A stretch of DNA of 64,000 bases, taken from IMG/VR virus record IMGVR_UViG_3300035070_002626, positions 62,001-126,000 of that record; one strand, written 5' to 3'. The notes under the pieces were generated by a model that was not told where the DNA came from, did no database searches, and worked only from the letters and a program-made list of their open reading frames with translations. Positions 28,773 through 64,000 of this stretch are shown in pieces. Each line of letters begins with the position of its first letter. Position 1 is the stretch's first letter. Position numbers and translations under genes: made by a program.

Positions 28773-31700
28773 TTATCCTAAAATAGTTGTCTTCGGAAAT
28801 ACAAGATATTTATCGTATTTGTCCGTCTTACCGTACATATCTACGGGTGTAGTAAACCTCAAACTATTGCCATCGAATGTGGTTGCATTGTTAACTGCAC
28901 TAGTTGCAACATAACCTGCTTCTCCCTGATCGTTGTCTTGGAAGATGCTATTCAATGTAGCAAAGTTTGGTTTGCTCAGTACAGGTGCAAAGTACTTCTC
29001 AAACAGTGCATGCCCTAATGGGTTGTTTGCTAATATGCCAGATGGTGTTCTCATTAGATCGTTCCATTCCGGTGCTAGACTTTCGCCAGCCCAAAAAACA
29101 CTCATCTCCCACATGCCCCAATTTAGCAAATACATGTACTCTTTCATTAGTACACCTGCTTCCTGTGGGTCGTACGGGTCACTTGCGCCAGCATCATACA
29201 TACCATTGTCAATTGCTTGTTCCATTGCTTTAAATAACTCAGTGCCTGTGTATGTTCCTGGGTTATTTTCACTGTCCCAGTTGAGTTCAGTAACTGATCC
29301 TTGAACACCGCCACGTACACCATATAGATGTATTGTATGCATAATGTGTTCAAACACTTCTTCAATGTCTTTAGTTCCAGTGCCGTTCCAGCCGTTGTTG
29401 TTTTTATACCATACCATGTCGTTAACTGCATGCTGGTCTAAAAAATCTGTGTAACCAGCATAAGATGCTGCACCTATATCGGTTAGCCAGTTTGGAGAAT
29501 AAGAACTGCCGCCGCCATACCCAATTCGTTGTGCAGTTTGGTAGCCAGCATGCCAAGTTCCAGCTGCACCATTTAGTGTGCGGATCATTTGTTGTTGTGC
29601 TGTAGTATTGATTCCCGTTGCATCTTTGTCCATTAACAGTTGATAACTTCTACCAACCTTTTTGACCCAGGCATCAGGTACAGCCTCTTGCCCGCCAACT
29701 GCTCCTGCTGCAACAACTAGTATGCCGTTAACCGTTAAGCTTCTGTCAAAGATTTCACTATTAGTAGCGTCAGCAACCAACGATGTTGAAACATACAAAC
29801 CACTTATATTAAATTCAACATCAAACGTAGTGCCAAGTGGCGGTGATGGGTTCCATGCTCCACCGTCTGTTGAATCTTCGTTTGGTATCCAGTTTGCAGT
29901 AAGTTGGTTGTCTAGTATATATCTATCACTGATAAAGTCCACGCGATTTAGTATTTCACCAAACTGTGTGCGTATGTTATAACTAATTCTATCACTTTCA
30001 CCTGGATTGGTATAACAAATCACCCACGCTTTAGTAAAGCCTAATACTCTACCATCTGTTTGTTTTGTGGTCATCCACAATGGCAACACTGTGTTTTCTT
30101 GTCCAACAACATCGACAACTTGATTTCGCATGTTAACCAAACTATTCGGATACACAGTGCTAATGGTTTGATCAACTTCGCCTGTGGTTGGGTCGTATAC
30201 AAAAGAACTGTAATACAATATCAAGTTGTCAAAGTGTTGATCAATTGGCGCATAATAATTAGTTGGCCCAACAGGAAACTCACACTGATTCTCCACACCA
30301 TCTTCGTTTTTATTATTGTATGGATTCTGGGGATGTCTAAGTGCATACGAGTAACAACAACAGATTGAATGATTCTTTGATATGTCTTTTTTACCATTAG
30401 AGTCTGTATACAATGTATCAAACAAAACTTCTTGAGCAACTGGAATAAATCCCAATAATGGCCCAGGAAGTGTTGGTACGAGATCATTTTTATTTGTAAG
30501 CCTGTAAAAGTTATTGCCCAGCGTGTTACCGTCTTTGTCTTCAAGAGCATTAAAGTAATCAGCGTATATTTGGTTACCCACTGTTGGTGATGCGCTCACA
30601 TAACCTTCGACGCGGTTAAATTTGTTCAAACTTTGAGCATAGTTGGCAATCAATGTACTGATCGAACTTCCAAGACTGTGTCCTCCAATTTTGATTTTTG
30701 TTTTAGTGGTGTCGTTTAACACAGTGTACAAACTCTTACCTGGAACATCTGCTGCTCGAACTTCAAGAGGGTCAGGACCAAGACCTTTGTATGCCATAGT
30801 AAATCCATTTTGTGTTTTACCTTTACCAAAGCCGGCAATTGGATTTATAACTTTTCCACTCATAAAGTCTAACGTAAAATCATATGAAGTTTGTGTGCCA
30901 CGCATTGTGATGTATGCAGTATCACCTACTTCTATTAAAAAGCCAAACGGTGCAACACTGCGAACTACCTTAGGCGGATCTAGTTTTTGACCATTGGGAT
31001 CCTTGTTGATGGTTACTGTATAGTCACACCATATAATATCATCTGCTGTGAGTGCTTCGAGTGCTGACCTAAATTTCTCATATCGTAACGGTTCGTTGAT
31101 GTTTACCGGACATTGGTTACTTGGTGCTGGAGTAAAAGTATCGTTTGCTTTAGGATTTGGAATATATTTGTTACCATCCCAACGTTCTGCAGGATCTCCT
31201 GGTTGTCCTTGCCCAACCCAATCTCTAGCTAGTTGACTCATGACATTGGTTAGAAGGTTTAGATCTCTTGCTTCTTCTAAATATGCTTCGCTTACTTGAT
31301 TAAGTGCAGTTACATTCGGATCTCCAATGCTGCCATTGCTAAAGTTTTCATCAACTAATTCTCGAGCTTCGGTGGCTGCTTGATTCGGCACTGTAACAGG
31401 ATACGGCAGATTAATACTTTGCGGCGGCGATTCTCCGAGTTTGTTTACGCCAGTGTCAATTACGTCACTGTACACAACTTCGTATGCAACTGTTCCGTCA
31501 CTGTTTAATGCTTGTGCTGTTTTTATGTTGCCAAGTATTAACTTCTTTCGAAAGTGATTTTTGCTCAGTGCAACCAAATATTCGTCAAGTGTAGCAGTAT
31601 CCAAGCTATATGCATGTGTGTAAGTTACATTTTTTGCAATACCAAAATATGGGTCATCGGCTCTATACACTCTACTAGGCGGAATGATATCAGTATCTTG

Positions 31701-36610: not shown

Positions 36611-37069
36611 TTATTTAAACTCCCAATTTGGTTCTAAAATAGTAATTTCATCTTCCCCGTATGGTAGGATGAATGTATCGATTAATACAGCATCTTCTTC
36701 GCCTAAGTTTGCCGCTGCCATTGGTGTATCTGCTGGCATATAATAACAAGTACCTGCTGGGTAATGCGATGGTTCACTACCTTCTACAAAATCAGTCATG
36801 ATTCCGCTAAGAACACAAGTATGACCTCCATACTTGTGTACATGGATACCAACTCTTGTTCCTGCTTTGCGTGTGCCTTTTATAACATGTAATCTATTGC
36901 CGTCGCTTGTTTTTGTTTCAAGCATTGTTACAGTATCTTGTAAAGGTAATAGTTCACCCGGAGGCACTTTGCTGTTAATTGTAGTAATTGGATCTGTCCA
37001 TTTAGGTTTAGCACTCAAACACCCGCTTAATAGTAAACTAATAGTTGCTGCTATTAATACTTTTTTCAT
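36611..37069 (-). CDS. Cupin-domain lipoprotein
   Basis: Lipobox LSGC; IHVHKYGGHTCVLSG and YYMPADTPM cupin motifs. Confidence 0.75.
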   Translation of the reverse strand: MKKVLIAATISLLLSGCLSAKPKWTDPITTINSKVPPGELLPLQDTVTMLETKTSDGNRLHVIKGTRKAGTRVGIHVHKYGGHTCVLSGIMTDFVEGSEPSHYPAGTCYYMPADTPMAAANLGEEDAVLIDTFILPYGEDEITILEPNWEFK

Positions 37070-37070
37070 A

Positions 37071-37238
37071 TTAGTCTTCTTTCTGCCAAATAGCCCAAGC
37101 ACCGTATGCAATAGCAGCATATGCAGCTAATTTAGCAAATGGCCCTGCAATCAAAATGACCAAGCCGACTCCGATTAGTACAGCACCATCCCAAGAAGTA
37201 CGCTCATCTACTCTACTTTTAATCCATCGTCTAATCAT
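37071..37238 (-). CDS. Small two-TM protein
   Basis: ERTSWDGAVLIG...; start trimmed to MIRRW. Confidence 0.65.
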   Translation of the reverse strand: MIRRWIKSRVDERTSWDGAVLIGVGLVILIAGPFAKLAAYAAIAYGAWAIWQKED

Positions 37239-37801
37239 TATAATCTCCCGTTGATTGCATTCCAATTGATGATCTTCATCATATTGTTTATATACTTTTT
37301 CTTAGCGTCTTTGGCAGGCACATAATCCATAAACGAATGCTCCCACATGTCGATTGGTAATAGTATATCTGTTTTGTATGATTGGTTAGGCGTAGTTTTA
37401 ATCTTGCCATTCTTAGCAAGGTACACCCAGCCGCTGCCTTGAAGTGTCATTGCAACACGCAACATTTCTTTTTTAAAATTGTCGTAGTCTTCGTGGTGTG
37501 CGTCGATAAATTCTTTAATTGTCCCGGTAGGTCTGTTTGCGCCTTTGGGTGCTTGTAACTGTTGCCAAAATAAGTTGTGAAGTTTTGCTCCACCGTAATT
37601 AAATTTAGGATCGCCTTCGTTGTTGTTGTAACGATTTACATATCCTTTGGTCAACACATTGTAATGGTAGTCAACATTTTCTTTAGAAAGCACAGGAGCT
37701 AATGCACCACTGTCGTACGGCAGTGCATCGGCTGCTAATTTCTCTTCTTGTTTGTCTTCGGTTAGTTGAATGTATTTTCTAATTTCTTGTTGCATGTACA
37801 T
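37238..37801 (-). CDS. Fe/Mn superoxide dismutase
   Basis: DYHY, LHNLFW, GSGWVYL, DMWEH motifs (all four metal ligands present). Confidence 0.88.
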   Translation of the reverse strand: MYMQQEIRKYIQLTEDKQEEKLAADALPYDSGALAPVLSKENVDYHYNVLTKGYVNRYNNNEGDPKFNYGGAKLHNLFWQQLQAPKGANRPTGTIKEFIDAHHEDYDNFKKEMLRVAMTLQGSGWVYLAKNGKIKTTPNQSYKTDILLPIDMWEHSFMDYVPAKDAKKKYINNMMKIINWNAINGRL

Positions 37802-43273: not shown

Positions 43274-43350
43274 GGTATTTCTCCTAACTGTTACATACAG
43301 TATAACCGAAATGTAATAAAAGGTCAACCTTTATTTTGCATATTTGAGAA

Positions 43351-43548: not shown

Positions 43549-43639
43549 TATATTTCTCCGATGATAAGGCAGTGGATTGCCGTTCTAGTATATACAGTAT
43601 AGCCGATCTTGATAAAAAGGTCAACCTAAATCGTATCAA

Positions 43640-44001: not shown

Positions 44002-44076
44002 GTTTTTCTCCTAGCTGTTACATATAGTATAGCCTAAAACAATAAAAAGGTCAACCTGTATTTTGCATTAATCGTA

Positions 44077-44522: not shown

Positions 44523-45212
44523 TTAGAACAATAATTTAAAACCAAACTCGGTGGTAGTGTTTTGCGGTTCATACAATCCGTTGTTAACAGATGAATCGGC
44601 AATGTTCCAGTGCGTGGCAAACACACCATAGTTGTGATTGGGCAACCATTCTAATTCAACTCCATAGCCACTGTCTTGGGTATTAGTTGTTTGAGAATAG
44701 CCTGCTTGGGTTATGTAACTAGTTTGGTTACCACTGATTAGATAGTTAACTTGATATTTGAAATACCCACCACGGTTGTTGTATATTATATTGCCAAGCG
44801 GTGCGTATAGATACTGCGACCTTCTGTTGTATGTGAAGTGTCCAGTAGATGATTGTTTGCCGCCCCAACGATCATTTAGCTGCCGAAAGCCTAGCCCGAT
44901 ATAAAAAGAATTATATTTGTATGATATTTCGCCCGACAGACCTGTTGTGAGGTCATTTTTAGTTTTGCCAGTATTACTCGACGTATAGTCTGTTGTGCCG
45001 ACAAAATACTTTGCATTGCCAACAAATCCGTTTTGATATCGAGACTTGTAATCTTGATATCCAATGCCAGCAAATCCGTATGACGAAGCCTTGGACATTA
45101 AACCCGGCTCGGTATACTTGTAATCGTATAGTTCAACAAAGTACTGCGAAGTATCAGCCGCGGTACTCGGTGTGCCAAACGCTAGTGCAACGGCTGTTAA
45201 GTGCGATTTCAT
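44523..45212 (-). CDS. Outer-membrane beta-barrel protein
   Basis: N-terminal signal-like segment; alternating aromatic beta strands; C-terminal ...EFGFKLLF beta-signal. Confidence 0.7.
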   Translation of the reverse strand: MKSHLTAVALAFGTPSTAADTSQYFVELYDYKYTEPGLMSKASSYGFAGIGYQDYKSRYQNGFVGNAKYFVGTTDYTSSNTGKTKNDLTTGLSGEISYKYNSFYIGLGFRQLNDRWGGKQSSTGHFTYNRRSQYLYAPLGNIIYNNRGGYFKYQVNYLISGNQTSYITQAGYSQTTNTQDSGYGVELEWLPNHNYGVFATHWNIADSSVNNGLYEPQNTTTEFGFKLLF

Positions 45213-45676
45213 TTGCGTTTTTTCTCTCTATAAAACAAGTGGTCATCAATTTGCCCAACAAAGTTAAAGTCTGGGCGCCAGTTTGGTTTGACATTCTTGG
45301 CATGATACCACATGGACCCATCTGTGCCATCGTATCCTTGCTGGTGTAATACCAATGCTTCTGATGCCAACACTTGTGCAGCTTCCCATGCTTCTTGATC
45401 TTTAGGAGCATCACTAAGTCCATCGCAATACCAACTAAACTGGCACATATGGCGTTTCATTGATCCGTCTTTGTTTTTTACACCTTGGTACACCACGCCG
45501 CAAATTGTATCTGGAAAACGCTTGCTGTTGACACGATTAAACACCACATGTGATACTGCTACTTTTCCTGCCACGCTTTGGTTACGTGCTTCAAAGTAAA
45601 TATTCTTGGCAAGACACTCGTGCTCTGCTGGGCTGCTAAAGGCTACTGTTAAACTTATGATTGCTTCTGCTAACAT
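45209..45676 (-). CDS. SleB-like cell wall hydrolase (Hydrolase_2)
   Basis: CLAKNIYFEARNQ, VVFNRV, CQFSWYCDG, HLFY. Confidence 0.9.
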   Translation of the reverse strand: MLAEAIISLTVAFSSPAEHECLAKNIYFEARNQSVAGKVAVSHVVFNRVNSKRFPDTICGVVYQGVKNKDGSMKRHMCQFSWYCDGLSDAPKDQEAWEAAQVLASEALVLHQQGYDGTDGSMWYHAKNVKPNWRPDFNFVGQIDDHLFYREKKRK

Positions 45677-45797
45677 TGTTTGCTCCTGTTTTTTATTCTC
45701 TTTGTAGTTATACTATAACCGAAACTAAAGAAAAGGTCAACCTCTAAATGCCAAAAAGTTTATTTTTCTTGAGTATATTTTACAGATAATTAAATGT

Positions 45798-46343
45798 ATG
45801 ACAACATCTTTACCCAAGTATGAGTTTTTCACAGGTGTGCCCGGCAGTCGCTGGAGTGGAATAGCACAAGAAATCAAACTAAATCCAGAATACAACACAT
45901 CAGACAGGGCACCACATCGTGTGTACACACATGGTGACTTTTCTGGACACAAGGATGCATACTTTGGCACGGGCATGGAATTCAATACCGACTTAGATGA
46001 GTATAACTTGGATGCACCATTTTCAAAAGCCGGCGGCATTAAGTTATTAATGAGCCACGAATGGCCTTATTATTTCGACGAGATTGTTGAACGCTACCCG
46101 GATGCTTGGATAACACTTGTGTATCGGCCAGGTCCTGCTAGCATGCAATGGTGGTTACAAGCCGGCGGATTTGATATCACATACCCAAACTATGATTGGT
46201 ACCAAAATGAATCAACTATGGCTGTTCAGATTCATCAACAGAACAAATTAATACTTGACTTTGCTCGCCAACATAAGTTACAATGGGCACAACATAAAAA
46301 ACACAGCGACATCCTCATGACCACGCTAAAAGGCATTCAATGA
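45798..46343 (+). CDS. Hypothetical protein with P-loop/sulfotransferase-like N-terminal motif
   Basis: FFTGVPGSRWSG resembles a phosphate-binding loop; tentative. Confidence 0.55.
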   Translation: MTTSLPKYEFFTGVPGSRWSGIAQEIKLNPEYNTSDRAPHRVYTHGDFSGHKDAYFGTGMEFNTDLDEYNLDAPFSKAGGIKLLMSHEWPYYFDEIVERYPDAWITLVYRPGPASMQWWLQAGGFDITYPNYDWYQNESTMAVQIHQQNKLILDFARQHKLQWAQHKKHSDILMTTLKGIQ

Positions 46344-47020
46344 ATCATAAAATCTTAAATAAACTGGAGCAAATGCTGCATACTAGTCCGCAGTTGTTGC
46401 GCAACAAAAACACACTGCATCAGGCTATCCAGGGTACATTCAATGTTTCACTCGACAGTGTAGATTATAATAATATCGGCGAGCTGGTTGATCGAATTGA
46501 CGACAAAGTGCTGGACGAATACTTTAGAAATCACTGGCAAGGCGAAATGTCAAAATATAAGTACAGCGGCCCAGCATTAATTGACGAAGTTAACAAACTA
46601 AAACCACGCAAAGTACTAGACATCGGATGTGGCTATCACGAGTTCAAACACAAGATTGATAATATTATAGGTATTGACCCCTACAATGATGCTGCTGATT
46701 TGACTGTTAAATTGCTGGATCATCACCCGCAAGAAAAATATGATGTAGTGCTAGCACTGGGATCAATCAACTTTGGCAGCACAGATAAAGTTTTTGCAGA
46801 ACTAGAACATGCAGTAAACTTGTGCAACCCAGGTGCGATTATGTTCTTTAGAGCAAACCCTGGCTTGCCGCACCACAAGGATGAATCAAACTGGATATCA
46901 TTTTATCCATGGGATAGCAACTTTGTAGTTAACTGTGCTACACAATTAAACGTTGATATTCTTGATTTAAGAACCGATAGTCATAAAAATCGACTGTACT
47001 TTGTCTGGCGTACTAAATAA
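46340..47020 (+). CDS. Class I SAM-dependent methyltransferase
   Basis: KVLDIGCG, GIDP, YDVVLALGS. Confidence 0.8.
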   Translation: MNHKILNKLEQMLHTSPQLLRNKNTLHQAIQGTFNVSLDSVDYNNIGELVDRIDDKVLDEYFRNHWQGEMSKYKYSGPALIDEVNKLKPRKVLDIGCGYHEFKHKIDNIIGIDPYNDAADLTVKLLDHHPQEKYDVVLALGSINFGSTDKVFAELEHAVNLCNPGAIMFFRANPGLPHHKDESNWISFYPWDSNFVVNCATQLNVDILDLRTDSHKNRLYFVWRTK

Positions 47021-47160
47021 ATTTAACAAGAAAAGCTAACGCTCGAATGTAAAGAAGTTCAGCTTTTTCTATCCCAATAATTTTTAACTCGGGCGAGTAA
47101 TCGTCTGTCTCTGACTAGTCTCATTGAGATTAGCCAGATTTTTCCTATGAAGGCTGCACT

Positions 47161-48699
47161 ATGTATTTTCTTGACTTATATATTATAGTATTAATGTTAG
47201 GAGTGTTCTATGGATTTTTTGTAGGATTAATACCAGTTGCTGGTGCAACCACAGGGCTGATTGCTGTGTACAGTTTTGTTACGTATTTCCATGATCCTTA
47301 CATGCTAGTAGTGTTTACAACCGCAGTAGTTGTTACTAGCAGCATCGGTGATACATTTTGCGGTGTTGTAATGAACGTTCCGGGAGCAGGTGGCGCAGCG
47401 GCTACTATGGTGGATGGATTTCCAATGAGTAGACGGGGACAAGCGGCACGAGCACTTAGTGCAGCAATTAGTACAAGTTGGGTAAACGGTTTGATTTGGG
47501 GATTGCTGGTATTTTTGTTTCTACCATATTATACTAAAATTGTACTGTATTTTGGCACTACTGAAATGTTTGCATTTTTGTTGTTTGCAATGACATGTGT
47601 TATTTTTATTAGCAGCAAATACTGGATCCGTGGCATCTTTGCGCTTGTAGCGGGGGTTGTGTTAGGACTAGTGGGTATGGACCCAGACACCGCAGCACAG
47701 CGTTGGATTACAGTAATACCAAACTTTGACTTTGACACATGGCGTGTTTACTTTACTGACTGGGACTATATCGAAAATGGAATTCAAATGATTCCAGTGA
47801 TGGCAGGTGTACTAGCATTTCCAGAACTAGTAAGTGCATACAGAATGAAAGCCACAAAGGTTAGTTTAACTAAAGGTGATATTCTCAACCAGTTGTGGCA
47901 AGGTATCAAGGACACTTGGAAATATCGTTGGGACGGACTGCGTGGTGGATTCATCGGCGGTTTTGTAGGACTAGTGCCTGGCATCGGCGGCAACATTGCA
48001 GATTGGTTTGCATATAGTCAAACAGTTGCACTGTCACGCAAAAAAACAAAAGGTGAGGTTGACGATTACAATGGCGAAGGGTACCCAGTAGGACAAGGTA
48101 ATGTACAAGGTGTAATTGGATGCGAAGGTGCCAACAATGCACAAAAGGCTACCAGTTATGTTCCTACTATTTTGTTTGGTATTCCGGGTGCACCGTTTGA
48201 AGTTATTGTAATGGGCTTGCTTATGTATGTTGGGCTTGAATTAGGTAGCCCAGCAGTGCTAGCAGACGGCGTGTTCTTTGACCACTTACTGAGCAGTTAT
48301 CTGTGGAGCTTGATAATTATTCTGCCAATTAGTTACGGATTCATTCGTTATGCAGTTTACATTACCAATATTCCATTCAAATATTACTTCTGGCCTATTA
48401 TGGCAAGTCTAGTATGGACTACATCACAGTACACAGGATTCATTGATGATTATCTTATGTTTGCTATGTGTTGCGTGGCTGGACTAGGTATGAAGTATTT
48501 TAAATTCAGTCGTATAAGTTTCCTAATTGGATTTATCTTATCACATAGACTTGAAGCAAGTTGGGTACAATTCAACACATTCGGTTACGGATGGGAAGAT
48601 TTATTACTTGAACCCTTCCCAGCAGCATTTATTGCACTAGCAATAGCGGCTGCAATATGGGGAATATTTTTTAACAAAGCAAAAATTGATTTCGTATAG
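47161..48699 (+). CDS. tctA: Tripartite tricarboxylate transporter large permease (TctA family)
   Basis: ~12 TM helices; GLIPVAG, NVPGAGGAAATMVDGFPM, PGIGG, CEGANNA, GIPG motifs. Confidence 0.85.
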   Translation: MYFLDLYIIVLMLGVFYGFFVGLIPVAGATTGLIAVYSFVTYFHDPYMLVVFTTAVVVTSSIGDTFCGVVMNVPGAGGAAATMVDGFPMSRRGQAARALSAAISTSWVNGLIWGLLVFLFLPYYTKIVLYFGTTEMFAFLLFAMTCVIFISSKYWIRGIFALVAGVVLGLVGMDPDTAAQRWITVIPNFDFDTWRVYFTDWDYIENGIQMIPVMAGVLAFPELVSAYRMKATKVSLTKGDILNQLWQGIKDTWKYRWDGLRGGFIGGFVGLVPGIGGNIADWFAYSQTVALSRKKTKGEVDDYNGEGYPVGQGNVQGVIGCEGANNAQKATSYVPTILFGIPGAPFEVIVMGLLMYVGLELGSPAVLADGVFFDHLLSSYLWSLIIILPISYGFIRYAVYITNIPFKYYFWPIMASLVWTTSQYTGFIDDYLMFAMCCVAGLGMKYFKFSRISFLIGFILSHRLEASWVQFNTFGYGWEDLLLEPFPAAFIALAIAAAIWGIFFNKAKIDFV

Positions 48700-48708
48700 G
48701 AGAAAAAC

Positions 48709-49761
48709 ATGCCAATTAAAACACTACTAGCAGGCGCAGTATTTGCACTTGCAGCAACCACAGCAACAGCTGATATTACAGTGGTAAACCCGCAAAAACC
48801 AGGCGGTGGCACAACTGTTTGGACTGAAATCATTATGAAAGAGCTTTCAAAGCATCTAGGTGAGCGTATTGTTCTTCGCAACATTCCGGGCGCACGAGAC
48901 ATTCCGGGTATCAATGCTTGGCATAACGATCTACGTTTTGACGAAAACACAATTGTTGTTACGCATGGCGGTAACGGTGTAAGCTTCTTGCAAGAAGAAG
49001 TTGACTACAACTATGCCGACTATGATTCAATTGGTCTTATGAACTTGAACATTATCATGGGCAAAGTTAAAGGCGCAGACATGGATAAAGCAATCTTTGC
49101 TGGCACAAGTGGTGCTGTCCCAGAAGCATTTGCTATGGCAATGATGACATGTGGCCCAGATAAATCCGTTGATGAGTATATTACTTGCTTTGGTGAAAAC
49201 TTTAAATGGGTTAAAGGTATGAGTGGCGGAGAACGCCGTCTTGCATTTAAACGTGGCGACTTAACAGGTTCACGTGAAAATCCGGCTACATACCAAATCC
49301 ACATTGCACCAGACGAAAATGCAGAACTTTGGTTTCACCATGGTTTGCTTGATCCAGCTACAGGCAAGCACGTAGATGATCCAAACTTCCCAGGTTACCA
49401 ATTTGAAATCAAGTTTAAAGAGCGTTGGGGCGTAGAAGCAAGCGGCGAGTTTTACGATGCGTATGTATTAGTTAAATCATTCCGTGATGGTCTACAAAAA
49501 GCAATTTGGGTCAACAAAGGTAATCCAGAATTGCGTGATCGCTTGGTAGCAGCAATGAACAAAATGGCAAACGACCCAGAGTCAATGGCAGTTATTGAAG
49601 CTAAAAACGGCAAGTACGAATGGTTTATTGGTGAGCGTGGCGACCAAATGCGTGACACACTAATGACATTTATCACAGAAGATGCACTACGCAACTTGGT
49701 AAAATTCAACAAAGAAGCATTGGGACTTAACTCAATACTCAAAGAAAATCTATTTCCGTAA
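48709..49761 (+). CDS. tctC: Tripartite tricarboxylate transporter periplasmic binding protein (TctC/Bug family)
   Basis: Signal peptide; VVNPQKPGGGT, NIPGA motifs; adjacent to tctA. Confidence 0.78.
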   Translation: MPIKTLLAGAVFALAATTATADITVVNPQKPGGGTTVWTEIIMKELSKHLGERIVLRNIPGARDIPGINAWHNDLRFDENTIVVTHGGNGVSFLQEEVDYNYADYDSIGLMNLNIIMGKVKGADMDKAIFAGTSGAVPEAFAMAMMTCGPDKSVDEYITCFGENFKWVKGMSGGERRLAFKRGDLTGSRENPATYQIHIAPDENAELWFHHGLLDPATGKHVDDPNFPGYQFEIKFKERWGVEASGEFYDAYVLVKSFRDGLQKAIWVNKGNPELRDRLVAAMNKMANDPESMAVIEAKNGKYEWFIGERGDQMRDTLMTFITEDALRNLVKFNKEALGLNSILKENLFP

Positions 49762-49846
49762 AGCTATTAATAAGTAGATGACTAATGTGTGGAAGGGTAT
49801 TTGGCTCTTCCACACACACACACATTTTTAAAAGGAATAAACAGCA

Positions 49847-50518
49847 ATGGAAAGCAATTGGGAAAAAACTGCTCCACGCAACAACTATCACTATGATGCA
49901 TTTAAGCATGACCCTGCTTATGACAGTATGCGCTATGTGGGCAAGTTCACAGGTGATTGGAAAGAAGCACTGGATAGAACAGTTGAAAAAAGTAACGACA
50001 TTACTTGGCGCACACGCAATCCAATTGATAATCCAAACGGCAGTGAAGACATTGAAGCAGAAGAACTAGATTTGATCAATACTGGTGCGCCTGCTGACTT
50101 GGTTTTAACCAAACTAGACTATGCAATTGAACCTGTTTTCCAGCGTATGACTGATGCGCTACACTTACTACCAGGCGATGATAGAGATGTACAGCGCCGA
50201 GTCCATGTGCAGATGCCCGGACAAGTGTGGAACTTGCATGTTGATAAATTAGAAAAATGGAATAAAGCAGATCCTAAGAGTGTTTATCGATTTATGGTTA
50301 TGTTAAACGATTGGGAACCCGGTCACTTCTTACAGTACGGCAACCAAGTTCACACAGGGTATCGTGCAGGCGAGATTTACAGTTTTGATTGGTTTAATTC
50401 GCCACATTGTACAGCAAACGCAGGCAGAAGTCCACGTTGTACCTTACTAGTAACAGGTGTAGCAACAACAGAAATGCACATGCTGTTCTCGCACTATGAT
50501 CTTCAAATTGAGGTATGA
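49847..50518 (+). CDS. Cupin/2OG-Fe(II) dioxygenase-like protein
   Basis: HVQMPGQVWNLHVD (HxD) and distal PHCTAN His. Confidence 0.7.
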   Translation: MESNWEKTAPRNNYHYDAFKHDPAYDSMRYVGKFTGDWKEALDRTVEKSNDITWRTRNPIDNPNGSEDIEAEELDLINTGAPADLVLTKLDYAIEPVFQRMTDALHLLPGDDRDVQRRVHVQMPGQVWNLHVDKLEKWNKADPKSVYRFMVMLNDWEPGHFLQYGNQVHTGYRAGEIYSFDWFNSPHCTANAGRSPRCTLLVTGVATTEMHMLFSHYDLQIEV

Positions 50519-50671
50519 AACAACTAACAATAGCAGTTGGGCCACAGGGTAGCGGCAACCACTTATATGCTAAAATATTTGGAAGCAATCCAAATGTATA
50601 TGCATTATGTAGAGCACACTGAGTTAGATGATCTTATTAAACTAGCTAGCTCACACAGGGGTGCACTATGA
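50515..50671 (+). pseudogene. Internally deleted P-loop/sulfotransferase-like gene remnant
   Basis: MKQLTIAVGPQGSGNHLYAKIF stops after 35 codons; another frame continues HYVEHTELDDLIKLASSHRGAL* to an ATGA overlap with the next gene. Confidence 0.55.
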
Positions 50672-50892
50672 ATCATATAGTTTTTGTAAAGTATGCTAGC
50701 GCCGTAACTATATTGTGTGCTATGGTGTTGCATGTAGCAGGCATCACGCCTTGGAACAGTTTATTACAGATGGTGGGTGCCACAGGATGGATCTATGTTG
50801 GATATAGATGGAAGGAGAAAGCTCTTATACTGAACTTTCTCCCTCAATTTGCAATTATAATACCGATGCTAGTTGCTATGTATTGGTTGTAA
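50668..50892 (+). CDS. Small three-TM membrane protein
   Basis: Hydrophobic helices, ITPWN motif. Confidence 0.7.
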   Translation: MNHIVFVKYASAVTILCAMVLHVAGITPWNSLLQMVGATGWIYVGYRWKEKALILNFLPQFAIIIPMLVAMYWL

Positions 50893-51209: not shown

Positions 51210-52376
51210 TTAAATACCGTTGTACTTGTTGATGTGTTGATCTGGCAAGATTGGAAAGTCCAAGTCGTTTGCATCACAGTACGCATAGAAGTCTAAGATC
51301 AAAATGCTCAACAAACAATTGTCACTCCAACCACCTGGCAAGTCATGTGAACGATTAAACTTTTCCAAACGATTCTTTGCTTGTTTATGAAACTTGCTTG
51401 GACTTGCATATGTAGTTTTAAAGAACTGCATCAGTGCATCCTGCCACTCACGTGTGATAGTTGTTTTGTTTTTACGTGCAAGTTTAGCATAGCGACCTAG
51501 TGCTAGGATAAAGCCACCGTCGACACCTTTTTCATTTGCAAAATAACGATCGTGCAAGCTCAATGCAAATTCAAGATCGTGGATTGCGCTATCAAAGTTC
51601 TCACCTTCCATTTCGGCAACTCGGTTGAGACCTGAAATGTATGTCACCATGCCTGGCTTTGCGCCGTGCCCACGTGCTTCGACTGCTGGGCGTGTGTACA
51701 TATTTGCCTGTTCAACCACAGCCTGGATACGCTCGGCGTGCAAGTCTTCTGTAAGTGTGCTACCATAATTGCGTACACCACTTACACGGCTTTTGTGCAT
51801 AAAGTAAGGTTCAACAGCTTTACGACCTTTATAGTTGATCAAACGGAACAAGAAGTTGCCAAATGCTTCGCCCTTGGTATTGCTGCCCGGAACTACTGCA
51901 AGAGCATCAATTACCTTACATGCAACTGTGAAATCTTTTTCAATCATGCCGGCTTTCCACAGGATGTACAGTGCCACGGCTGTGTGCTGACCCTCTGGGA
52001 TACTGTAACGCCCATTGGGCAACTTGATGGTGTTTACAACTTGCACTGCTCGAGGATCAAACGATTCAATGATGTGTGCTACGTGATCCCAATCAACATC
52101 ACGTTGGTTGTCAATGTTGATATCCAGCAATTCAAATGCTACAAACTCAACGCCGCCAAAGTCTTTAGTTGCATAAGTGCCATTGCAACGATTACGCAGA
52201 CTATTGATTGCATCTGAGATAAGTTTTTGTGTTGGAAGGGTTTTTGTTGGATCAATGCGTGTTTCAAGATCTTCATACAAATCTTTATCTTGGCTACGTT
52301 CCATCAAGTTTTGAATTTTGGCAACGCTAAAAGGGTTGCGCTTGGGCATTGCCCGTGTTTCAAGTTTAACTGTCAT
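51210..52376 (-). CDS. ParB-like N-terminal domain protein (DUF6551/DGQHR-like)
   Basis: LDINIDNQRDVD...IIESFDPRAVQVV...YSIPEGQHT; own promoter 52439..52467. Confidence 0.6.
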   Translation of the reverse strand: MTVKLETRAMPKRNPFSVAKIQNLMERSQDKDLYEDLETRIDPTKTLPTQKLISDAINSLRNRCNGTYATKDFGGVEFVAFELLDINIDNQRDVDWDHVAHIIESFDPRAVQVVNTIKLPNGRYSIPEGQHTAVALYILWKAGMIEKDFTVACKVIDALAVVPGSNTKGEAFGNFLFRLINYKGRKAVEPYFMHKSRVSGVRNYGSTLTEDLHAERIQAVVEQANMYTRPAVEARGHGAKPGMVTYISGLNRVAEMEGENFDSAIHDLEFALSLHDRYFANEKGVDGGFILALGRYAKLARKNKTTITREWQDALMQFFKTTYASPSKFHKQAKNRLEKFNRSHDLPGGWSDNCLLSILILDFYAYCDANDLDFPILPDQHINKYNGI

Positions 52377-52678: not shown

Positions 52679-53308
52679 TTACAATATATCTTTAATTTGT
52701 TTATACATGTGTTCGGCAACTTGTTTGTGCCCTTGTTCTAAGAAGTGCCCGTTTGGTCCAAGAGGAGAACCGTGGCTCCACTTAATAAAATCATCTCCGG
52801 GCCAACCAATAAAACAATCTGTGTTTAAAAAACCCAACATTTTTTTAAAATGAGGACTATTTTTGTTTTTATCTATTATATCATTGATACCCGACGAAAA
52901 GGCATGCACAAATCGATACGGAATTCTTTGGTTTTCTAAAAAATTTTGCAGTAGTATTGCTTGACATATCCATTCTAAGAATTTTCCAGTGGAGTTGTGA
53001 TACTCGCTGTATAACTGTTTTACAAAAGGATTATTGGTACTATCATTAATATTAATACACAAGCTATTATTATTTTCATCAAAGAATTCGTAGCGGTCTG
53101 GTGTAGTCCAAGCAATAATGGCCAATTCTGGCTTGTGTTCTAAACATTTTTGTATTACTTTGTTGCATACCCAGCTGTTGCTAGCACCTGGTTTAGCAAT
53201 GCTAACTACAATATGGTCAGTCATTTGATTTAGCACACCCGGCCATGCATCGTTCCGGTCTGCAAGCTCGTCACCAAACGTAAAACTGTCACCAAAACAA
53301 TAAATCAT
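52679..53308 (-). CDS. SGNH/GDSL-like hydrolase (paralogue 3)
   Basis: FGDSFTFG, PGASN, GHFLEQGH. Confidence 0.75.
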   Translation of the reverse strand: MIYCFGDSFTFGDELADRNDAWPGVLNQMTDHIVVSIAKPGASNSWVCNKVIQKCLEHKPELAIIAWTTPDRYEFFDENNNSLCININDSTNNPFVKQLYSEYHNSTGKFLEWICQAILLQNFLENQRIPYRFVHAFSSGINDIIDKNKNSPHFKKMLGFLNTDCFIGWPGDDFIKWSHGSPLGPNGHFLEQGHKQVAEHMYKQIKDIL

Positions 53309-53464: not shown

Positions 53465-53697
53465 TGATTTACAAACTCCGGCCATTGCTGTGCAAATAGA
53501 TCAGCATGTTCGTTCAATTCAAAAAAGAATGTATGTTCATACACATCAGTCCACGTATCCATCTTCCATTGGTGCCGCTCTAAGTTACGTCTACACCATG
53601 TTTTACCTTGTGTGTCAAGATCGCTGTGTAGACGAACTGAATGAGGATTGTTACTCATCCATCGCATTTTGTATTCACTTATTTCTAAAGGTGTCAT
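53461..53697 (-). CDS. Hypothetical protein
   Basis: ORF track. Confidence 0.7.
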   Translation of the reverse strand: MTPLEISEYKMRWMSNNPHSVRLHSDLDTQGKTWCRRNLERHQWKMDTWTDVYEHTFFFELNEHADLFAQQWPEFVNQ

Positions 53698-53954
53698 TAA
53701 ATATACTCGTAAAATCTAAGTAAGCCAACAACAGTAATGAGGCACATAACACCGTTGGTAATAATTAGTGCACGTTCCTGCCACCGAACCGCAACTATCA
53801 ACCAGACAAATCCGCCACAAAACAGCACCAGTGGGCCAAGCGGATATGACATTGGGTGTGCACTCACAATGTAGCTACCTACACATAATATCGATGTTGC
53901 AATCCATTTTAAAATAGTATCAACTGTTTGAGATGTCATATGCATATTTAACAT
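53697..53954 (-). CDS. Small three-TM membrane protein
   Basis: Hydrophobic helices; similar architecture to 50668..50892. Confidence 0.7.
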   Translation of the reverse strand: MLNMHMTSQTVDTILKWIATSILCVGSYIVSAHPMSYPLGPLVLFCGGFVWLIVAVRWQERALIITNGVMCLITVVGLLRFYEYI

Positions 53955-56245: not shown

Positions 56246-56640
56246 ACAAAATTCAACAATGGGCAGACGAGTTGTCAATCTTCGACGATGTAATGGATCA
56301 GTATCAGTTGTTGATTGACATGGCCAAAAAACCTACATCACTGCCTGCGGAACTGAGAACAGATGATAAACTTGTAAGCGGGTGTATCAGCAGTATTTGG
56401 GTAGATGTAGGCACAGTTGATAATAAAACTAAAATTTATTACGACAGTGATGCTATGATTACAAAAGGTGTGACACATGTTGTCTGTGATTGTTTCAATG
56501 ATTTGCCACTAGACGAAGCCAAAAAGATTCAGCGTGGTGACTTTGAAGCATTATCATTAGAAGGCATCCTAAGCAGCAACAGACGCAACGGACTTGCAAG
56601 TTTGATTAGCACATTACAAACAAAGGTAGCAGCATTATAA
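56242..56640 (+). CDS. sufE: SufE-family sulfur acceptor
   Basis: YQLLID, VSGCISSIW, DSDAMITKG, SSNRRNG. Confidence 0.88.
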   Translation: MNKIQQWADELSIFDDVMDQYQLLIDMAKKPTSLPAELRTDDKLVSGCISSIWVDVGTVDNKTKIYYDSDAMITKGVTHVVCDCFNDLPLDEAKKIQRGDFEALSLEGILSSNRRNGLASLISTLQTKVAAL

Positions 56641-57779
56641 TGAATGACAAAATTTATCAAATCTTAAATAGAGAAGCAGCACGACAAGAATCGACAATAG
56701 AACTTATTGCAAGTGAAAACTTTGCTAGTCAAGCAGTTATGGATTTAGCAGGCAGTGTATTTACAAACAAGTATGCAGAAGGATATCCAGGCAAGCGTTA
56801 CTACAACGGTTGCGAGCATATGGATGAGATTGAAACACTTGCGATTGACACATTGTGTAACCTGTACGGAGCAAAGTTTGCAAACGTACAGCCACACTCA
56901 GGTGCTAATGCTAACACAGCAGTATATCAAGCACTAATGAAACCAGGTGATAAGATCCTTGGTATGGACCTAGCAAGCGGCGGCCATTTGTCGCACGGTG
57001 CTCCTGTTAATATTTCAGGTAAAGTTTATGAAGCTCATTCGTATGGCGTAAACAAAGAAGGTTGGTTAGATTATGAAAATATTCGTGATATAGCCGAGCG
57101 TGTTAAACCAAAAATGATTGTTGCCGGTGCTAGTGCTTATCCACGTGAAGTTGACTGGGCACAAATGCGCTATATTGCAAACGCTGTGGGTGCTTATCTA
57201 TTGGTTGACATGGCACATTATTCAGGATTGATTGCAGGCGGAGTGTATCCAAATCCAGTGCCCTATGCTGATGTAGTGACTAGTACAACACATAAAACAC
57301 TGCGTGGTCCACGTGGCGGTATTATCTTATGGAACAACGAAGAACTTACACGTAAGATTAATAGTGCTATCTTCCCTGGCACACAAGGTGGCCCGCTTAT
57401 GCACATCATTGCTGCCAAGGCACAGTGCTTTATTGAAGCAGACACACAAGACTATAAAAACTACGCACAGGCGGTTGTACGCAATGCTAAGGCTATGTGT
57501 GATGTGTTTAGACAGCGTGATTTGCCAGTACAAACAGGCGGCACTGACAGTCATATTATTCTTATGGATCTAAGTAACAGCAAGTATAGTGGCAGACAAG
57601 CCGCAGACTTACTAGAAGAAAATGGTATCACAGTAAACAAGAACGGTATACCAAATGATCCACGTAGCTTTGTAGAAACAAGTGGCATTCGTATTGGCAC
57701 AGCTGCCGAAACTACTCGTGGGCATGATGAAACGTGGTTTAGAAAATTAGCACATAAGATTGCAGATATACTAGAATGA
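56640..57779 (+). CDS. glyA: Serine hydroxymethyltransferase
   Basis: LIASEN, NKYAEGYPG, GGHLSHG, DMAH, TTHKTLRGPRGG (PLP Lys). Confidence 0.95.
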   Translation: MNDKIYQILNREAARQESTIELIASENFASQAVMDLAGSVFTNKYAEGYPGKRYYNGCEHMDEIETLAIDTLCNLYGAKFANVQPHSGANANTAVYQALMKPGDKILGMDLASGGHLSHGAPVNISGKVYEAHSYGVNKEGWLDYENIRDIAERVKPKMIVAGASAYPREVDWAQMRYIANAVGAYLLVDMAHYSGLIAGGVYPNPVPYADVVTSTTHKTLRGPRGGIILWNNEELTRKINSAIFPGTQGGPLMHIIAAKAQCFIEADTQDYKNYAQAVVRNAKAMCDVFRQRDLPVQTGGTDSHIILMDLSNSKYSGRQAADLLEENGITVNKNGIPNDPRSFVETSGIRIGTAAETTRGHDETWFRKLAHKIADILE

Positions 57780-62309: not shown

Positions 62310-63104
62310 TTGAGTACCCCATCGAGTATTAATGCATTGCATTGCAAACAACGTAGTTTGTTAATGGCTAAGTTGTCTCGTATTTCTTACTTTGATGTAA
62401 AAACAGCAACCAAGGAAGCAAGAAAATTGGGGTTTACTACAGTAGAGTTTTACGATAAAGACGGAGCACAAGCATATCGCTTTATGAATAAAACGGACCT
62501 GGTTATTGCATGCCGAGGTACACAACCCAGCGAGTTTAATGATATCAAAGCAGACTTAAAAGCAATGCCGGTTCTTGCAGAAACAGTTAGCAGGGTGCAC
62601 AGAGGATTTAAAAAGGAAGTCGACGACCTTTGGCCAATGATACAAGAAGATTTGTTGCGCAAAACAAATTTAGACAAAACTCTTTGGTTCTGTGGACATA
62701 GTTTGGGAGCAGCAATGGCTACTATCATGGCTAGCCGTTGTGTGCACAATATAGAACTAAATGATCCAGCCGAACTACACACATTTGGTAGCCCGCGAGT
62801 AGGCTGGCGCAAGTATGTTAAGAGTCTAGGTGTAGTACATCATCGCTGGAAGAACAATAATGACATTGTCACTACTGTTCCTCTTGCTATTATGGGATAT
62901 GTGCATCATGGTAATCTATATTATCTCAATGCCTACGGACGAGTGCGTACACCCACTGGATGGCAATTAATCAAAGACAAATGGCGTGGCATTTGCATGG
63001 GTCTAAAACAAGGTAAAATAGACAACTTTAGTGATCATTCGATTGATGAGTACGTCAAATACATACAACGCCATATTGAATGGTTACCAAATAAAAATGA
63101 TTAA
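62310..63104 (+). CDS. Class 3 lipase (alpha/beta hydrolase)
   Basis: ACRGT, VHRGF, GHSLGAA, TFGSPRVG, NNDIV, DHS; TAAATA at 62277. Confidence 0.9.
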   Translation: MSTPSSINALHCKQRSLLMAKLSRISYFDVKTATKEARKLGFTTVEFYDKDGAQAYRFMNKTDLVIACRGTQPSEFNDIKADLKAMPVLAETVSRVHRGFKKEVDDLWPMIQEDLLRKTNLDKTLWFCGHSLGAAMATIMASRCVHNIELNDPAELHTFGSPRVGWRKYVKSLGVVHHRWKNNNDIVTTVPLAIMGYVHHGNLYYLNAYGRVRTPTGWQLIKDKWRGICMGLKQGKIDNFSDHSIDEYVKYIQRHIEWLPNKND

Positions 63105-63302: not shown

Positions 63303-64000
63303 TTAAGCAACTAGTTTTTCTTCGTTGTTGCTGTAATAATGTTGTAACAACATTGCGCTTGCTAGATTTTTGCACTTTGCTTCTACCATAATGTCTGCCC
63401 AGTGCCAGTGTGACAATACATAATCATTCAATGCATCATTAGGAAGGTAATCACTATGTGCTCGTAGCTTACCTCGGGCAATACCACTTTCCATCAGTGC
63501 TGCACGATCAGGGCGTGTGTGGGTATCAAGTGGCAGTAAGATTTGTTCTTGGCTTTGGCTGTAATGCATGGCTGGTCGCTCGCCACGCCAGCTGTCTACA
63601 ATGCGTTTAATACGGTCATCGTTGGCTTCAATGTACGAACCTTCACGTACCCAATGGTGATGTACATCTAGCACCAAAGCGAGATCGTTTGCAAGCTCAA
63701 GACTGTCGTCGATTCCCCATCTGTTTTCGTCGTTTTCGATTGTAATAGTGTTTCTGGCTTCCGGCGTGAAGCGTTTAATTGCGTCTTTGATACCGGCTGG
63801 ACCTTGTCGGCCTGAGATGTGTACGTTGCACTTGAAGTCTTGGAACTTCTTGCCGTAACCCATCCACCGTATGAGAGTGGCGTGATATTCAAATTCTTCT
63901 ATGCTCCGTTCTACAATTTCAGGATTATCACTTGCAAGCACAACAAATTGTCCTGGGTGCATGGATAGTCTAACATCAAGTGCTCGTGCTGTGTCACCTA
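63303..64000 (-). CDS. uvsE: UV-damage endonuclease (5' part outside the window)
   Basis: RLSMHPGQF, ITIENDE, LVLDVHHH, HYSQS, AHSD, DIMVEAKCKNLA. Confidence 0.9.
   Translation of the reverse strand, partial: GDTARALDVRLSMHPGQFVVLASDNPEIVERSIEEFEYHATLIRWMGYGKKFQDFKCNVHISGRQGPAGIKDAIKRFTPEARNTITIENDENRWGIDDSLELANDLALVLDVHHHWVREGSYIEANDDRIKRIVDSWRGERPAMHYSQSQEQILLPLDTHTRPDRAALMESGIARGKLRAHSDYLPNDALNDYVLSHWHWADIMVEAKCKNLASAMLLQHYYSNNEEKLVA

What the first reader, a model, noticed from the sequence alone, without database searches (positions are those of the whole stretch)
45798..50892. Phage operon coupling a TctA/TctC importer to methyltransferase, dioxygenase and P-loop/sulfotransferase-like enzymes
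Seen: a + strand island against the - strand background: P-loop-like ORF, SAM methyltransferase, TctA (512 aa), TctC (350 aa), HxD...H dioxygenase, deleted GPQGSGN gene and a three-TM protein. No tctB is visible unless the three-TM gene substitutes. Known: TTT systems import carboxylates or sulfonates. Inference: a complete phage-encoded 'import and tailor' pathway for a small organic acid/sulfonate, yielding a modified metabolite or a DNA/virion modification. I know of no characterised system with this layout.
Basis: partly seen in the sequence, partly recalled or inferred. Interest (0 to 1): 0.78.

Follow-up and report, generated by a model that had tools for sequence, protein, structure and literature searches.

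The report
Phage solute-uptake and tailoring gene cassette
A large marine phage carries a conserved cassette that pairs its own nutrient-type membrane importer with a methyltransferase, a sulfotransferase-like protein and an oxygenase; the cassette recurs in hundreds of uncultivated ocean phages, so infected cells probably take up and chemically modify a still unknown small organic acid.

Summary
Window 45798-50892 is a + strand block in a - strand phage background. It holds:
- A, a sulfotransferase-like P-loop protein
- B, a class I SAM methyltransferase
- C, a full-length TctA
- D, a secreted 350-aa protein that Pfam misses but that is a divergent TctC/Bug binding protein by fold and by profile comparison
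- E, a 2OG/Fe(II) oxygenase
- the stump of a deleted second P-loop gene (f5)
- F, a small DUF6552 membrane protein

No tctB is present.

The set is not a recent host operon. It occurs only on viral contigs or misbinned phage contigs. D is about 26% and TctA about 30% identical to the nearest bacterial relatives. dN/dS is 0.04-0.09.

Among 45 non-redundant loci, TctA accompanies D in 45, B in 42, a sulfotransferase-like paralogue in 41 and E in 29. The window's other neighbours appear in 1-3. At least five gene orders keep the set together. Where TctA is absent, the enzymes sit beside an orphan canonical TctC (9 loci) or a sodium:solute symporter (1 locus).

The cassette is therefore a real functional unit, best read as uptake coupled to tailoring. 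Substrate, product and benefit to the phage remain unknown. The main rival is hydroxylation followed by sulfation of a protein or glycan.

The parts
45798..46343 (+). A: sulfotransferase-like P-loop protein (181 aa), cytoplasmic
   Evidence: The window protein has no Pfam hit. Five of 12 family members give weak Sulfotransfer_3/_4 hits, best 1.4e-4. Atlas feature neighbours and the structure of a close family member point to sulfotransferase families at TM 0.54-0.61. Invariant residues are G13, P15, G16, S17, W19, S20, H87 and nearly invariant R110. The stop overlaps the start of B (ATGA).
46340..47020 (+). B: class I SAM-dependent methyltransferase (226 aa)
   Evidence: Methyltransf_23, 2.2e-6, 27.9 bits against a cutoff of 27. 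Invariant D94-x-G96-C97-G98 motif I. A profile against PDB sequences hits small-molecule methyltransferases, with TehB best at 9e-4. It lies near D in 42 of 45 loci.
47161..48699 (+). C: TctA, the large membrane subunit of a tripartite tricarboxylate transporter (512 aa)
   Evidence: PF01970, 2.2e-79, full-length match. About 30% identical to bacterial TctA proteins that sit next to D-like binding proteins. dN/dS 0.04-0.06.
48709..49761 (+). D: secreted, highly divergent TctC/Bug-family solute-binding protein (350 aa)
   Evidence: AF2 model with pLDDT 91. The top 17 PDB Foldseek hits are all Bug/TctC proteins at TM 0.54-0.70. The top 8 Swiss-Prot AFDB hits are UPF0065/Bug. hhalign against canonical viral PF03401 TctC gives probability 94.5%, E 8e-8. 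No Pfam hit for any of 22 members. It starts 9 nt after the TctA stop.
49847..50518 (+). E: 2-oxoglutarate/Fe(II) oxygenase of the Asp/Asn-beta-hydroxylase-like kind (223 aa)
   Evidence: AF2 model with pLDDT 82. VIA Z 12 to SnoN, proline 3-hydroxylase, PHD2 and PiuC. Foldseek hits L-proline cis-4-hydroxylase and AspH. The nearest cellular Atlas clusters carry PF05118. Invariant H131, D133, H187 and R197.
50515..50622 (+). Stump of f5, a second P-loop (GPQGSGNH) sulfotransferase-like gene, inactivated by an internal deletion of about 470 bp
   Evidence: A 35-codon ORF read from the sequence. blastn against L021, L006 and L003 shows the missing segment, and full-length f5 is 206-236 aa. f5 aligns weakly with the A family: hhalign E 3e-4, probability 40%.
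50668..50892 (+). F: small DUF6552 membrane protein (74 aa, 2-3 TM), an occasional companion of the cassette
   Evidence: PF20189, 2.8e-10. Near D in 13 of 45 loci. It also lies next to A in TctA-less loci such as L226 and L228. A paralogue lies at window 53697-53954.

Best explanation
This is a viral auxiliary cassette that gives the infected cell a new uptake route and processes what comes in.

Shown: D is exported to the periplasm of a Gram-negative host and has the two-lobed Bug/TctC fold. C is a full-length TctA permease. The two genes are always adjacent.

Inferred: D binds an anionic organic solute, most likely a carboxylate, and delivers it to TctA, which imports it using the membrane ion gradient. 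TctB is either supplied by the host or not needed. In the cytoplasm the solute, or a molecule built from it, is tailored by the co-encoded enzymes. E hydroxylates it (2OG/Fe(II)). B methylates it (SAM). A, and in relatives its paralogues f5 and f10, add sulfate from PAPS to a hydroxyl group. Some versions of the cassette add adenylate-forming ligases.

The product and its use to the phage are unknown.
For: - Identities of C, D, B, E and A.
- Co-occurrence around D in 45 non-redundant loci with at least 6 kb on each side: TctA 45, B 42, any sulfotransferase-like paralogue 41, E 29. The window's other neighbours score 1-3.
- The same result comes from independent anchors. From A: B 34/35, C and D 27/35. 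From E: A 30/35, C and D 29/35. From B: TctA in 54/68.
- At least five gene orders (ABCDE, BACD, CDAEB, CEBDA, BDCE) keep the set together, and enzymes sometimes lie between C and D.
- Nine TctA-less loci place A, B or E beside an orphan canonical TctC (PF03401, 3e-18 to 2e-36). One locus places B and f5 either side of an SSF symporter.
- AMP-binding enzymes, which act on carboxylates, flank C-D in another variant.
- An APS-kinase-like gene (32.9 bits, cutoff 21.1) lies nearby in 8 of 45 loci. This fits PAPS use.
- dN/dS is 0.04-0.09.
- Start/stop overlaps and short gaps in the window suggest co-translation.
- Bacterial fusions of Sulfotransfer_3 with Asp_Arg_Hydrox (618 members) tie A-type and E-type enzymes to one pathway.
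Against: - No substrate, product or activity is shown for any part.
- A is sulfotransferase-like only by weak sequence hits and by the structure of relatives. Its loop lacks the usual basic residue, and I could not model it.
- TctB, a defining third TTT subunit, was not found.
- Some loci carry the enzymes with no transporter within 8 kb (L220, L225, L230, L268-271), so the enzymes do not strictly need a phage-encoded importer.
- In this phage f5 is deleted, so the set is dispensable in part.
- The single SSF replacement resembles urea/polyamine and choline carriers rather than carboxylate carriers.
- The hydroxylase + sulfotransferase + methyltransferase triad has been predicted elsewhere to act on proteins (PMC2938197).
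Confidence: 0.5

Rival explanations
1. The enzymes form a macromolecule-modifying system. E hydroxylates, and A and B then sulfate and methylate, a phage structural protein (tail fibre, collar or collagen-like) or a host envelope glycan. The TTT pair is a co-regulated supplier of a precursor, or simply a nutrient-uptake gene kept alongside.
For: Iyer et al. 2010 (PMC2938197) described bacterial neighbourhoods that combine beta-hydroxylases, methyltransferase fusions, sulfotransferases and PAPS synthetases with tail-collar or collagen-like proteins. They predicted hydroxylation followed by sulfation. E's nearest cellular clusters are PF05118, often fused to sulfotransferase or TPR domains. Virion structural genes (f26, f27) follow the cassette in several loci. 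Carbamoyltransferase, glycosyltransferase and radical-SAM genes are frequent neighbours. The enzymes occur without any transporter in some loci.
Against: No candidate substrate protein is conserved with the cassette, whereas uptake parts are: 45/45 TctA with D, plus the orphan TctC and SSF replacements. Enzyme genes are interleaved between tctA and the binding-protein gene in some orders. E's fold does not distinguish protein hydroxylases from small-molecule hydroxylases.
Confidence: 0.28
2. C and D are a plain nutrient-acquisition auxiliary gene pair, analogous to cyanophage PstS, that boosts uptake of a carbon, nitrogen or energy source. The neighbouring enzymes are unrelated cargo of a hypervariable island.
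For: tctA has been listed before as a putative viral auxiliary gene (PMC4164917). Known Bug/TctC ligands are common metabolites such as citrate, Asp, Glu, malate and nicotinate/quinolinate (PMC5812351; titles). The surrounding regions are rich in assorted metabolic genes.
Against: Linkage to B and a sulfotransferase-like gene is near-universal (39/45 have both), while true flanking genes are not conserved (1-3/45). The linkage survives rearrangement and replacement of the transporter.
Confidence: 0.15
3. The imported compound is appended to phage DNA or nucleotides, as a hypermodification.
For: The window encodes SHMT and ParB-N-domain proteins. One distant T4-like relative has QueC next to TctA.
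Against: No DNA-modifying enzyme is conserved in the cassette: no DNA kinase with a Walker A lysine, no glycosyl or amino-acid transferase, no nucleotide-binding partner. QueC adjacency is seen in a single lineage.
Confidence: 0.04
4. It is a host operon picked up recently, or a bacterial contig misassigned as viral.
For: Three hits lie in GTDB genome bins.
Against: Those three contigs carry the same cassette, and L071 also has virion, endolysin, spanin and phrog_4871 genes. The bins are taxonomically discordant: Polynucleobacter, Weeksellaceae, Legionellales. D is 26% and TctA 30% identical to the nearest bacterial systems, which have the order SBP-TctA-TctB. GC content matches the phage. Relatives number in the hundreds on IMG/VR contigs of up to 383 kb.
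Confidence: 0.02

Closest known systems
TctCBA citrate transporter of Salmonella and the wider TTT family (TC 2.A.80), including Bug binding proteins of Bordetella (PMC5812351)
   Same: A PF01970 TctA permease paired with a secreted binding protein of the Bug/TctC fold, encoded side by side. The N-terminal glycine-rich loop (PGGGT) and the second SG loop align with those of canonical TctC.
   Different: No TctB. The gene order is TctA then binding protein. The binding protein is too diverged for Pfam (10-16% identity to solved Bug proteins, about 30-50 residues longer). It is carried by phages and tied to tailoring enzymes rather than to catabolic genes and a TctDE regulator.
Distant bacterial relatives of D (P0175, P0160, P0178) with the order SBP-TctA-TctB, the same order as the sulfolactate system SlcHFG described in PMC5812351
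   Same: They are the nearest cellular homologues of D, next to a TctA.
   Different: They have a TctB. One sits among FAD-dehydrogenase, PrpF, Iso_dh and 2-Hacid_dh genes, which is catabolic context. Identity to the phage proteins is only 25-30%. Whether any binds a sulfonate was not tested.
tctA reported as a putative auxiliary metabolic gene on SUP05 viral contigs (Roux et al. 2014, PMC4164917; review PMC6359870)
   Same: A TctA domain on marine viral contigs.
   Different: That report was a domain hit only, with the role stated as unknown. No binding protein, no enzyme partners and no conservation analysis were given. I did not test whether those contigs carry this cassette.
Predicted bacterial beta-hydroxylase / methyltransferase / sulfotransferase / PAPS-synthetase neighbourhoods (Iyer, Abhiman, de Souza, Aravind 2010, PMC2938197)
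   Same: The same three enzyme types, with a proposed order of hydroxylation followed by sulfation or methylation. An occasional APS-kinase-like partner is seen here too.
   Different: Those neighbourhoods carry tail-collar or collagen-like substrate proteins and no transporter. Here the constant partner is an uptake system.
Phage-encoded periplasmic phosphate-binding protein PstS of cyanophages, and sialic-acid import for surface decoration via the TRAP system SiaPQM in Haemophilus (both from my own knowledge, not tested here)
   Same: PstS is a virus supplying a binding protein to raise uptake in the infected cell. SiaPQM is a binding-protein-dependent secondary importer feeding a modification pathway rather than catabolism.
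   Different: PstS plugs into the host ABC transporter and has no tailoring enzymes. SiaPQM is cellular and belongs to the unrelated TRAP family.

Membership tests
Tripartite tricarboxylate transporter (TTT, TC 2.A.80) | Large membrane subunit TctA (PF01970, about 12 TM) | tested here: met
   PF01970, 2.2e-79, profile positions 1-422 of 423. At least 9 strongly hydrophobic segments by a crude scan.
Tripartite tricarboxylate transporter (TTT, TC 2.A.80) | Periplasmic binding protein of the TctC/Bug family: Pfam PF03401 at its threshold | tested here: not met
   No PF03401 hit at E<=1 for D or for any of the 22 family members.
Tripartite tricarboxylate transporter (TTT, TC 2.A.80) | Periplasmic binding protein of the TctC/Bug family: fold, remote homology, signal peptide, adjacency to tctA | tested here: met
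   The top 17 PDB hits and top 8 Swiss-Prot AFDB hits are Bug/TctC. hhalign against canonical viral TctC gives probability 94.5%, E 8e-8. A profile against PDB sequences puts BugD on top at E 0.017. The signal peptide ends ATA|D. D is adjacent to TctA in 45/45 loci.
Tripartite tricarboxylate transporter (TTT, TC 2.A.80) | Small 4-5 TM subunit TctB (PF07331) | tested here: not met
   tblastn with two bacterial TctB sequences found nothing in the window. No 4-5 TM ORF of 120-170 aa is present. The 4-TM family f23 that follows D in a few loci does not hit PF07331. TctB is poorly conserved (PMC5812351), and the rest of the 300-kb genome was not available, so its absence is not proven.
Tripartite tricarboxylate transporter (TTT, TC 2.A.80) | Binding-protein-dependent uptake of a carboxylate | not testable with these tools
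   Needs ligand binding and transport assays.
PAPS-dependent sulfotransferases (PF00685 / PF13469 / PF17784) | Family profile match | tested here: inconclusive
   The window protein has no hit. Three of 12 relatives hit Sulfotransfer_3 (best 0.03) and 2 of 12 hit Sulfotransfer_4 (best 1.4e-4).
PAPS-dependent sulfotransferases (PF00685 / PF13469 / PF17784) | Sulfotransferase fold with 5'-phosphosulfate loop, 3'-phosphate motif and catalytic base | tested here: inconclusive
   The model of a close family member, not of A itself, aligns to sulfotransferase clusters at TM 0.54-0.61. The invariant GxPGSxWS loop, H87 and the R110-P-D motif are compatible with the fold, and this reading is by eye.
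Class I SAM-dependent methyltransferases | Rossmann-type methyltransferase domain with glycine-rich motif I | tested here: met
   Methyltransf_23, 27.9 bits against a cutoff of 27. Invariant D-x-G-C-G. PDB profile hits to TehB and other methyltransferases.
2-oxoglutarate/Fe(II)-dependent oxygenases (Asp/Asn beta-hydroxylase-like, PF05118) | Double-stranded beta-helix fold with an HxD...H iron triad and a basic residue for 2OG | tested here: met
   Z 12 to many 2OG oxygenases. Invariant H131, D133, H187 and R197. That these residues form the triad is inferred from their spacing, not from superposition.
2-oxoglutarate/Fe(II)-dependent oxygenases (Asp/Asn beta-hydroxylase-like, PF05118) | Pfam profile match | tested here: not met
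   No PF05118 hit. One of 12 members hits 2OG-FeII_Oxy_3 at 0.13. Assignment to the PF05118 neighbourhood rests on Atlas structure matches at TM 0.60.
Viral auxiliary metabolic gene | Encoded on a bona fide viral genome, flanked by viral genes, and conserved among viruses | tested here: met
   Phage hallmark genes lie on both sides. Relatives number in the hundreds on IMG/VR contigs. Purifying selection.

The most novel reading that the evidence does not exclude
Ocean jumbo and T4-like phages carry a self-contained 'import, hydroxylate, sulfate and methylate' pathway. It is built on a TctB-independent TTT transporter with a new, virus-specific branch of TctC binding proteins. It turns a dissolved organic acid into a sulfated or methylated metabolite inside infected cells. 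That would be a virus-driven route of marine organic carbon and sulfur transformation not described so far.
Probability: 0.3. Interest if true: 0.8.

Novelty: new variant of a known kind. Interest (0 to 1): 0.62.

Why it matters
TTT transporters are among the least understood bacterial uptake systems, and the role of TctB is unknown. A widespread natural TctA + TctC pair without TctB offers a test of whether TctB is needed.

For marine virology, the D family has at least 1,412 relatives in public data. Every one of the ten clusters I looked up is labelled hypothetical. The family is a virus-specific binding protein whose ligand would show which dissolved compound infected cells are made to take up.

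The fixed partnership with a methyltransferase, sulfotransferase-like proteins and an oxygenase suggests that phages transform the compound rather than only acquire it. Auxiliary metabolic genes are not usually viewed in that way.

Tried and rejected
- DNA similarity to 50,697 phage records found no match. Protein searches of that collection with D found nothing, and with TctA found only 25-34% hits to unannotated fragments. No cultured phage carries the cassette.
- PHROGs gave no family for A-F.
- Pfam run on every member of the A, D and E alignments gave weak results only.
- Profiles of A, E and f5 against PDB sequences gave nothing significant.
- F (DUF6552) as a TctB substitute is rejected. 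It is near D in only 13/45 loci, also occurs in TctA-less loci, and has 2-3 TM. The 4-TM family f23 is not TctB by Pfam.
- The promoter and terminator scan found no more than chance. No flanking repeats mark a mobile cassette. There are no tRNAs.
- Trying to read the substrate from relatives failed. The orphan viral TctC hits all solved Bug proteins about equally. E matches protein and small-molecule hydroxylases alike. The single SSF replacement resembles DUR3 and choline carriers.
- Literature searches found only domain-level mentions of viral tctA.
- I considered specific ligands (trans-aconitate, betaines, pimelate, NAD precursors, sugar acids) but have no evidence that favours any of them.

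Full report
**What is in the window**

Window 45798-50892 holds six intact + strand ORFs and one stump. The neighbouring genes run on the - strand: an endolysin at 45209-45676 and a weak DUF6551 match at 51210-52376. GC skew flips sign over the block, while GC content stays at the phage's 0.41.

The window is phage DNA. It has a clamp loader that is 57% identical to that of Pseudomonas jumbo phage PA5oct, baseplate-wedge-like and ClpA-like (phrog_4871) proteins, and an endolysin. It is identical to part of a 299,910-bp IMG/VR contig.

**Identity of the parts**

- C is a full-length TctA (PF01970, 2.2e-79).
- D has a cleavable signal peptide and no Pfam hit, either alone or for 21 relatives.
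  - Its AF2 model (pLDDT 91) matches Bug/TctC proteins in the first 17 PDB ranks: BugE, MatC, BugD, Polaromonas TctC, Bug27, AdpC and TphC/TBP, at TM 0.54-0.70. Other class II binding proteins appear only below that.
  - The first eight Swiss-Prot AFDB hits are UPF0065/Bug proteins.
  - A profile of the D family aligns with canonical PF03401 TctC proteins from other phages at 94.5% probability, E 8e-8.
  - I therefore read D as a true but very divergent TctC.
- B is a class I SAM methyltransferase.
- E has the double-stranded beta-helix fold of 2OG/Fe(II) oxygenases, Z about 12 to proline 3-hydroxylase, SnoN, PHD2 and PiuC.
  - It has invariant H131-x-D133...H187 and R197.
  - Its closest cellular structural neighbours carry PF05118.
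- A is sulfotransferase-like on weaker grounds:
  - marginal Sulfotransfer_3/_4 hits for 5 of 12 relatives;
  - sulfotransferase clusters as the feature and structure neighbours of a close relative;
  - compatible conserved motifs.
- Right after E, a 35-codon ORF (50515-50622) is the N-terminus of f5, a 206-236-aa 'GPQGSGNH' protein that is intact in relatives. About 470 bp is missing here. f5 is a probable distant paralogue of A.
- F is a DUF6552 membrane protein, and a paralogue lies 3 kb away.
- I found no TctB.

**Is the set conserved together?**

Scans of IMG/VR were anchored separately on C, D, B, A and E.

Among 45 non-redundant D-bearing loci with at least 6 kb on each side:

| Gene near D | Loci (of 45) |
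|---|---|
| TctA | 45 |
| B | 42 |
| Any sulfotransferase-like paralogue (A, f5 or f10) | 41 |
| B plus such a paralogue | 39 |
| E | 29 |
| The window's real flanking genes | 1-3 each |

The other anchors agree:
- Anchored on A: B in 34/35, C and D in 27/35.
- Anchored on E: A in 30/35, C and D in 29/35.

The order varies: ABCDE, BACD, CDAEB, CEBDA and BDCE, with B sometimes inverted. The linkage is therefore maintained by selection and is not just inherited synteny.

Binding-protein clades co-vary with enzyme content. One clade is 'B C D f5' without A.

Where the window-type TctA/D pair is missing, the enzymes sit next to a canonical orphan TctC without TctA in nine loci. In one locus B and f5 flank a sodium:solute symporter.

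Another variant adds two adenylate-forming enzymes around C-D. An APS-kinase-like gene is a frequent neighbour.

**Is it a host operon?**

No.
- The only three hits in 185,579 species genomes are short contigs in taxonomically discordant bins. They carry the same cassette, and one also carries virion, endolysin and spanin genes.
- The nearest bacterial relatives of D are 25-28% identical. They sit in SBP-TctA-TctB operons, one of them in catabolic context.
- A further divergent branch lies in a T4-like phage next to gp13/14/15 homologues.
- dN/dS against three relatives is 0.04-0.09 for B, C, D and E.
- All ten D-family clusters that I looked up are labelled hypothetical.

**Mechanism**

Shown: a phage-encoded TctA and a secreted TctC-fold protein, always paired, under purifying selection, and genetically coupled to a methyltransferase, sulfotransferase-like proteins and, in two thirds of loci, a 2OG oxygenase.

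Inferred:
- D captures an anionic solute in the periplasm and TctA imports it.
- TctB comes from the host or is dispensable. The orphan-TctC phages imply hosts that have TctA(B).
- The enzymes hydroxylate, sulfate and methylate the imported compound or a derivative of it.

The recurrent swapping of the uptake part next to the same enzymes is the strongest argument that uptake and chemistry belong together.

The main rival comes from Iyer et al. 2010. They predicted that the same enzyme triad hydroxylates and then sulfates collagen-like or tail-collar proteins. Some loci have the enzymes without any transporter, and virion genes often lie nearby. I cannot exclude that the enzymes act on a macromolecule and that the transporter supplies a precursor.

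A DNA-modification role has no support in the conserved gene set.

**Comparison and novelty**

The transporter works like a TTT system and meets two of the three subunit criteria. It fails the TctB criterion, and its binding protein fails the curated Pfam threshold.

Viral tctA has been noted before only as a domain hit of unknown role. I found no description of the binding-protein family or of the cassette.

I rate it a new variant of a known kind. It is a TctB-less, virus-specific TTT branch fixed in a tailoring cassette that is widespread in uncultivated marine jumbo and T4-like phages.

**Limits**

- Model coordinates could not be inspected, so no pocket analysis was done.
- Only 64 kb of the 300-kb genome was searched for TctB.
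- The locus sets returned by the scans are capped at the best 80 and are biased towards relatives of the window's proteins.

Noticed in passing
window 24165-24198, 43296-43329, 43593-43626, 44023-44056, 45709-45742 (all - strand): A 34-nt promoter-like motif, GGTTGACCTTTT-N11-GNTATANTATA, occurs five times on the - strand against 0 expected by chance. It lies upstream of - strand genes, including the endolysin. No copy precedes the + strand cassette, so the cassette is probably in a different expression class.
   Followed up: partly
window 50668-50892 (+) and 53697-53954 (-); loci L226, L228, L220, L225, L230: There are two DUF6552 small membrane protein paralogues. The family is very well conserved (70-88% identity across phages) and often lies directly beside A or an SGNH/GDSL-like hydrolase (window 52679-53308), even in loci without TctA. 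Its function is unknown.
   Followed up: partly
window 44523-45212 (-): A 229-aa secreted protein with no Pfam or PHROG hit ends in ...FGFKLLF, which reads like an outer-membrane beta-barrel terminus. Its end overlaps the start of the endolysin gene. It is not conserved with the cassette (1/45 loci).
   Followed up: no
window 56640-57779 (+), 37238-37801 (-), 36611-37120 (-), 9480-11765 (-), 63303-63962 (-): Other metabolic or stress genes lie on the same phage: serine hydroxymethyltransferase (7e-152), Fe/Mn superoxide dismutase, a Cupin_2 protein, a ClpA-like ATPase (phrog_4871) and a UvdE UV endonuclease.
   Followed up: no
window 28773-33266 (-) and 62310-63104 (+): A 1,497-aa protein combines He_PIG Ig-like domains with a class 3 lipase domain, next to a baseplate/tail-fibre-like gene. 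A second stand-alone Lipase_3 gene lies further on.
   Followed up: no
L157:1108-8149 (ENA contig, T4-like phage): A very divergent binding protein + TctA pair (26% and 36% identity to the window's) sits directly upstream of QueC and of T4 gp13/gp14/gp15 homologues. This shows that TTT pairs occur in more than one phage backbone.
   Followed up: partly
L211, L220, L225, L226, L228, L230 (ORFs of 220-320 aa near A): Further multi-copy paralogues with a 'GGSGG(F/D)FL' glycine loop cluster around A, B and f5. They may be yet more P-loop or sulfotransferase-like enzymes. Two that I tested had no Pfam hit.
   Followed up: partly
L046/L047/L050 (about 1176-2225 and equivalents); L015:11509-11694; L056:3504-4370: Cassette neighbourhoods in other phages carry additional auxiliary genes, judged by eye from their sequences: a second lipoprotein-type amino-acid-binding-like SBP, a rubredoxin-like ORF between tctA and D, and Hsp20-like and IscU-like genes.
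   Followed up: no
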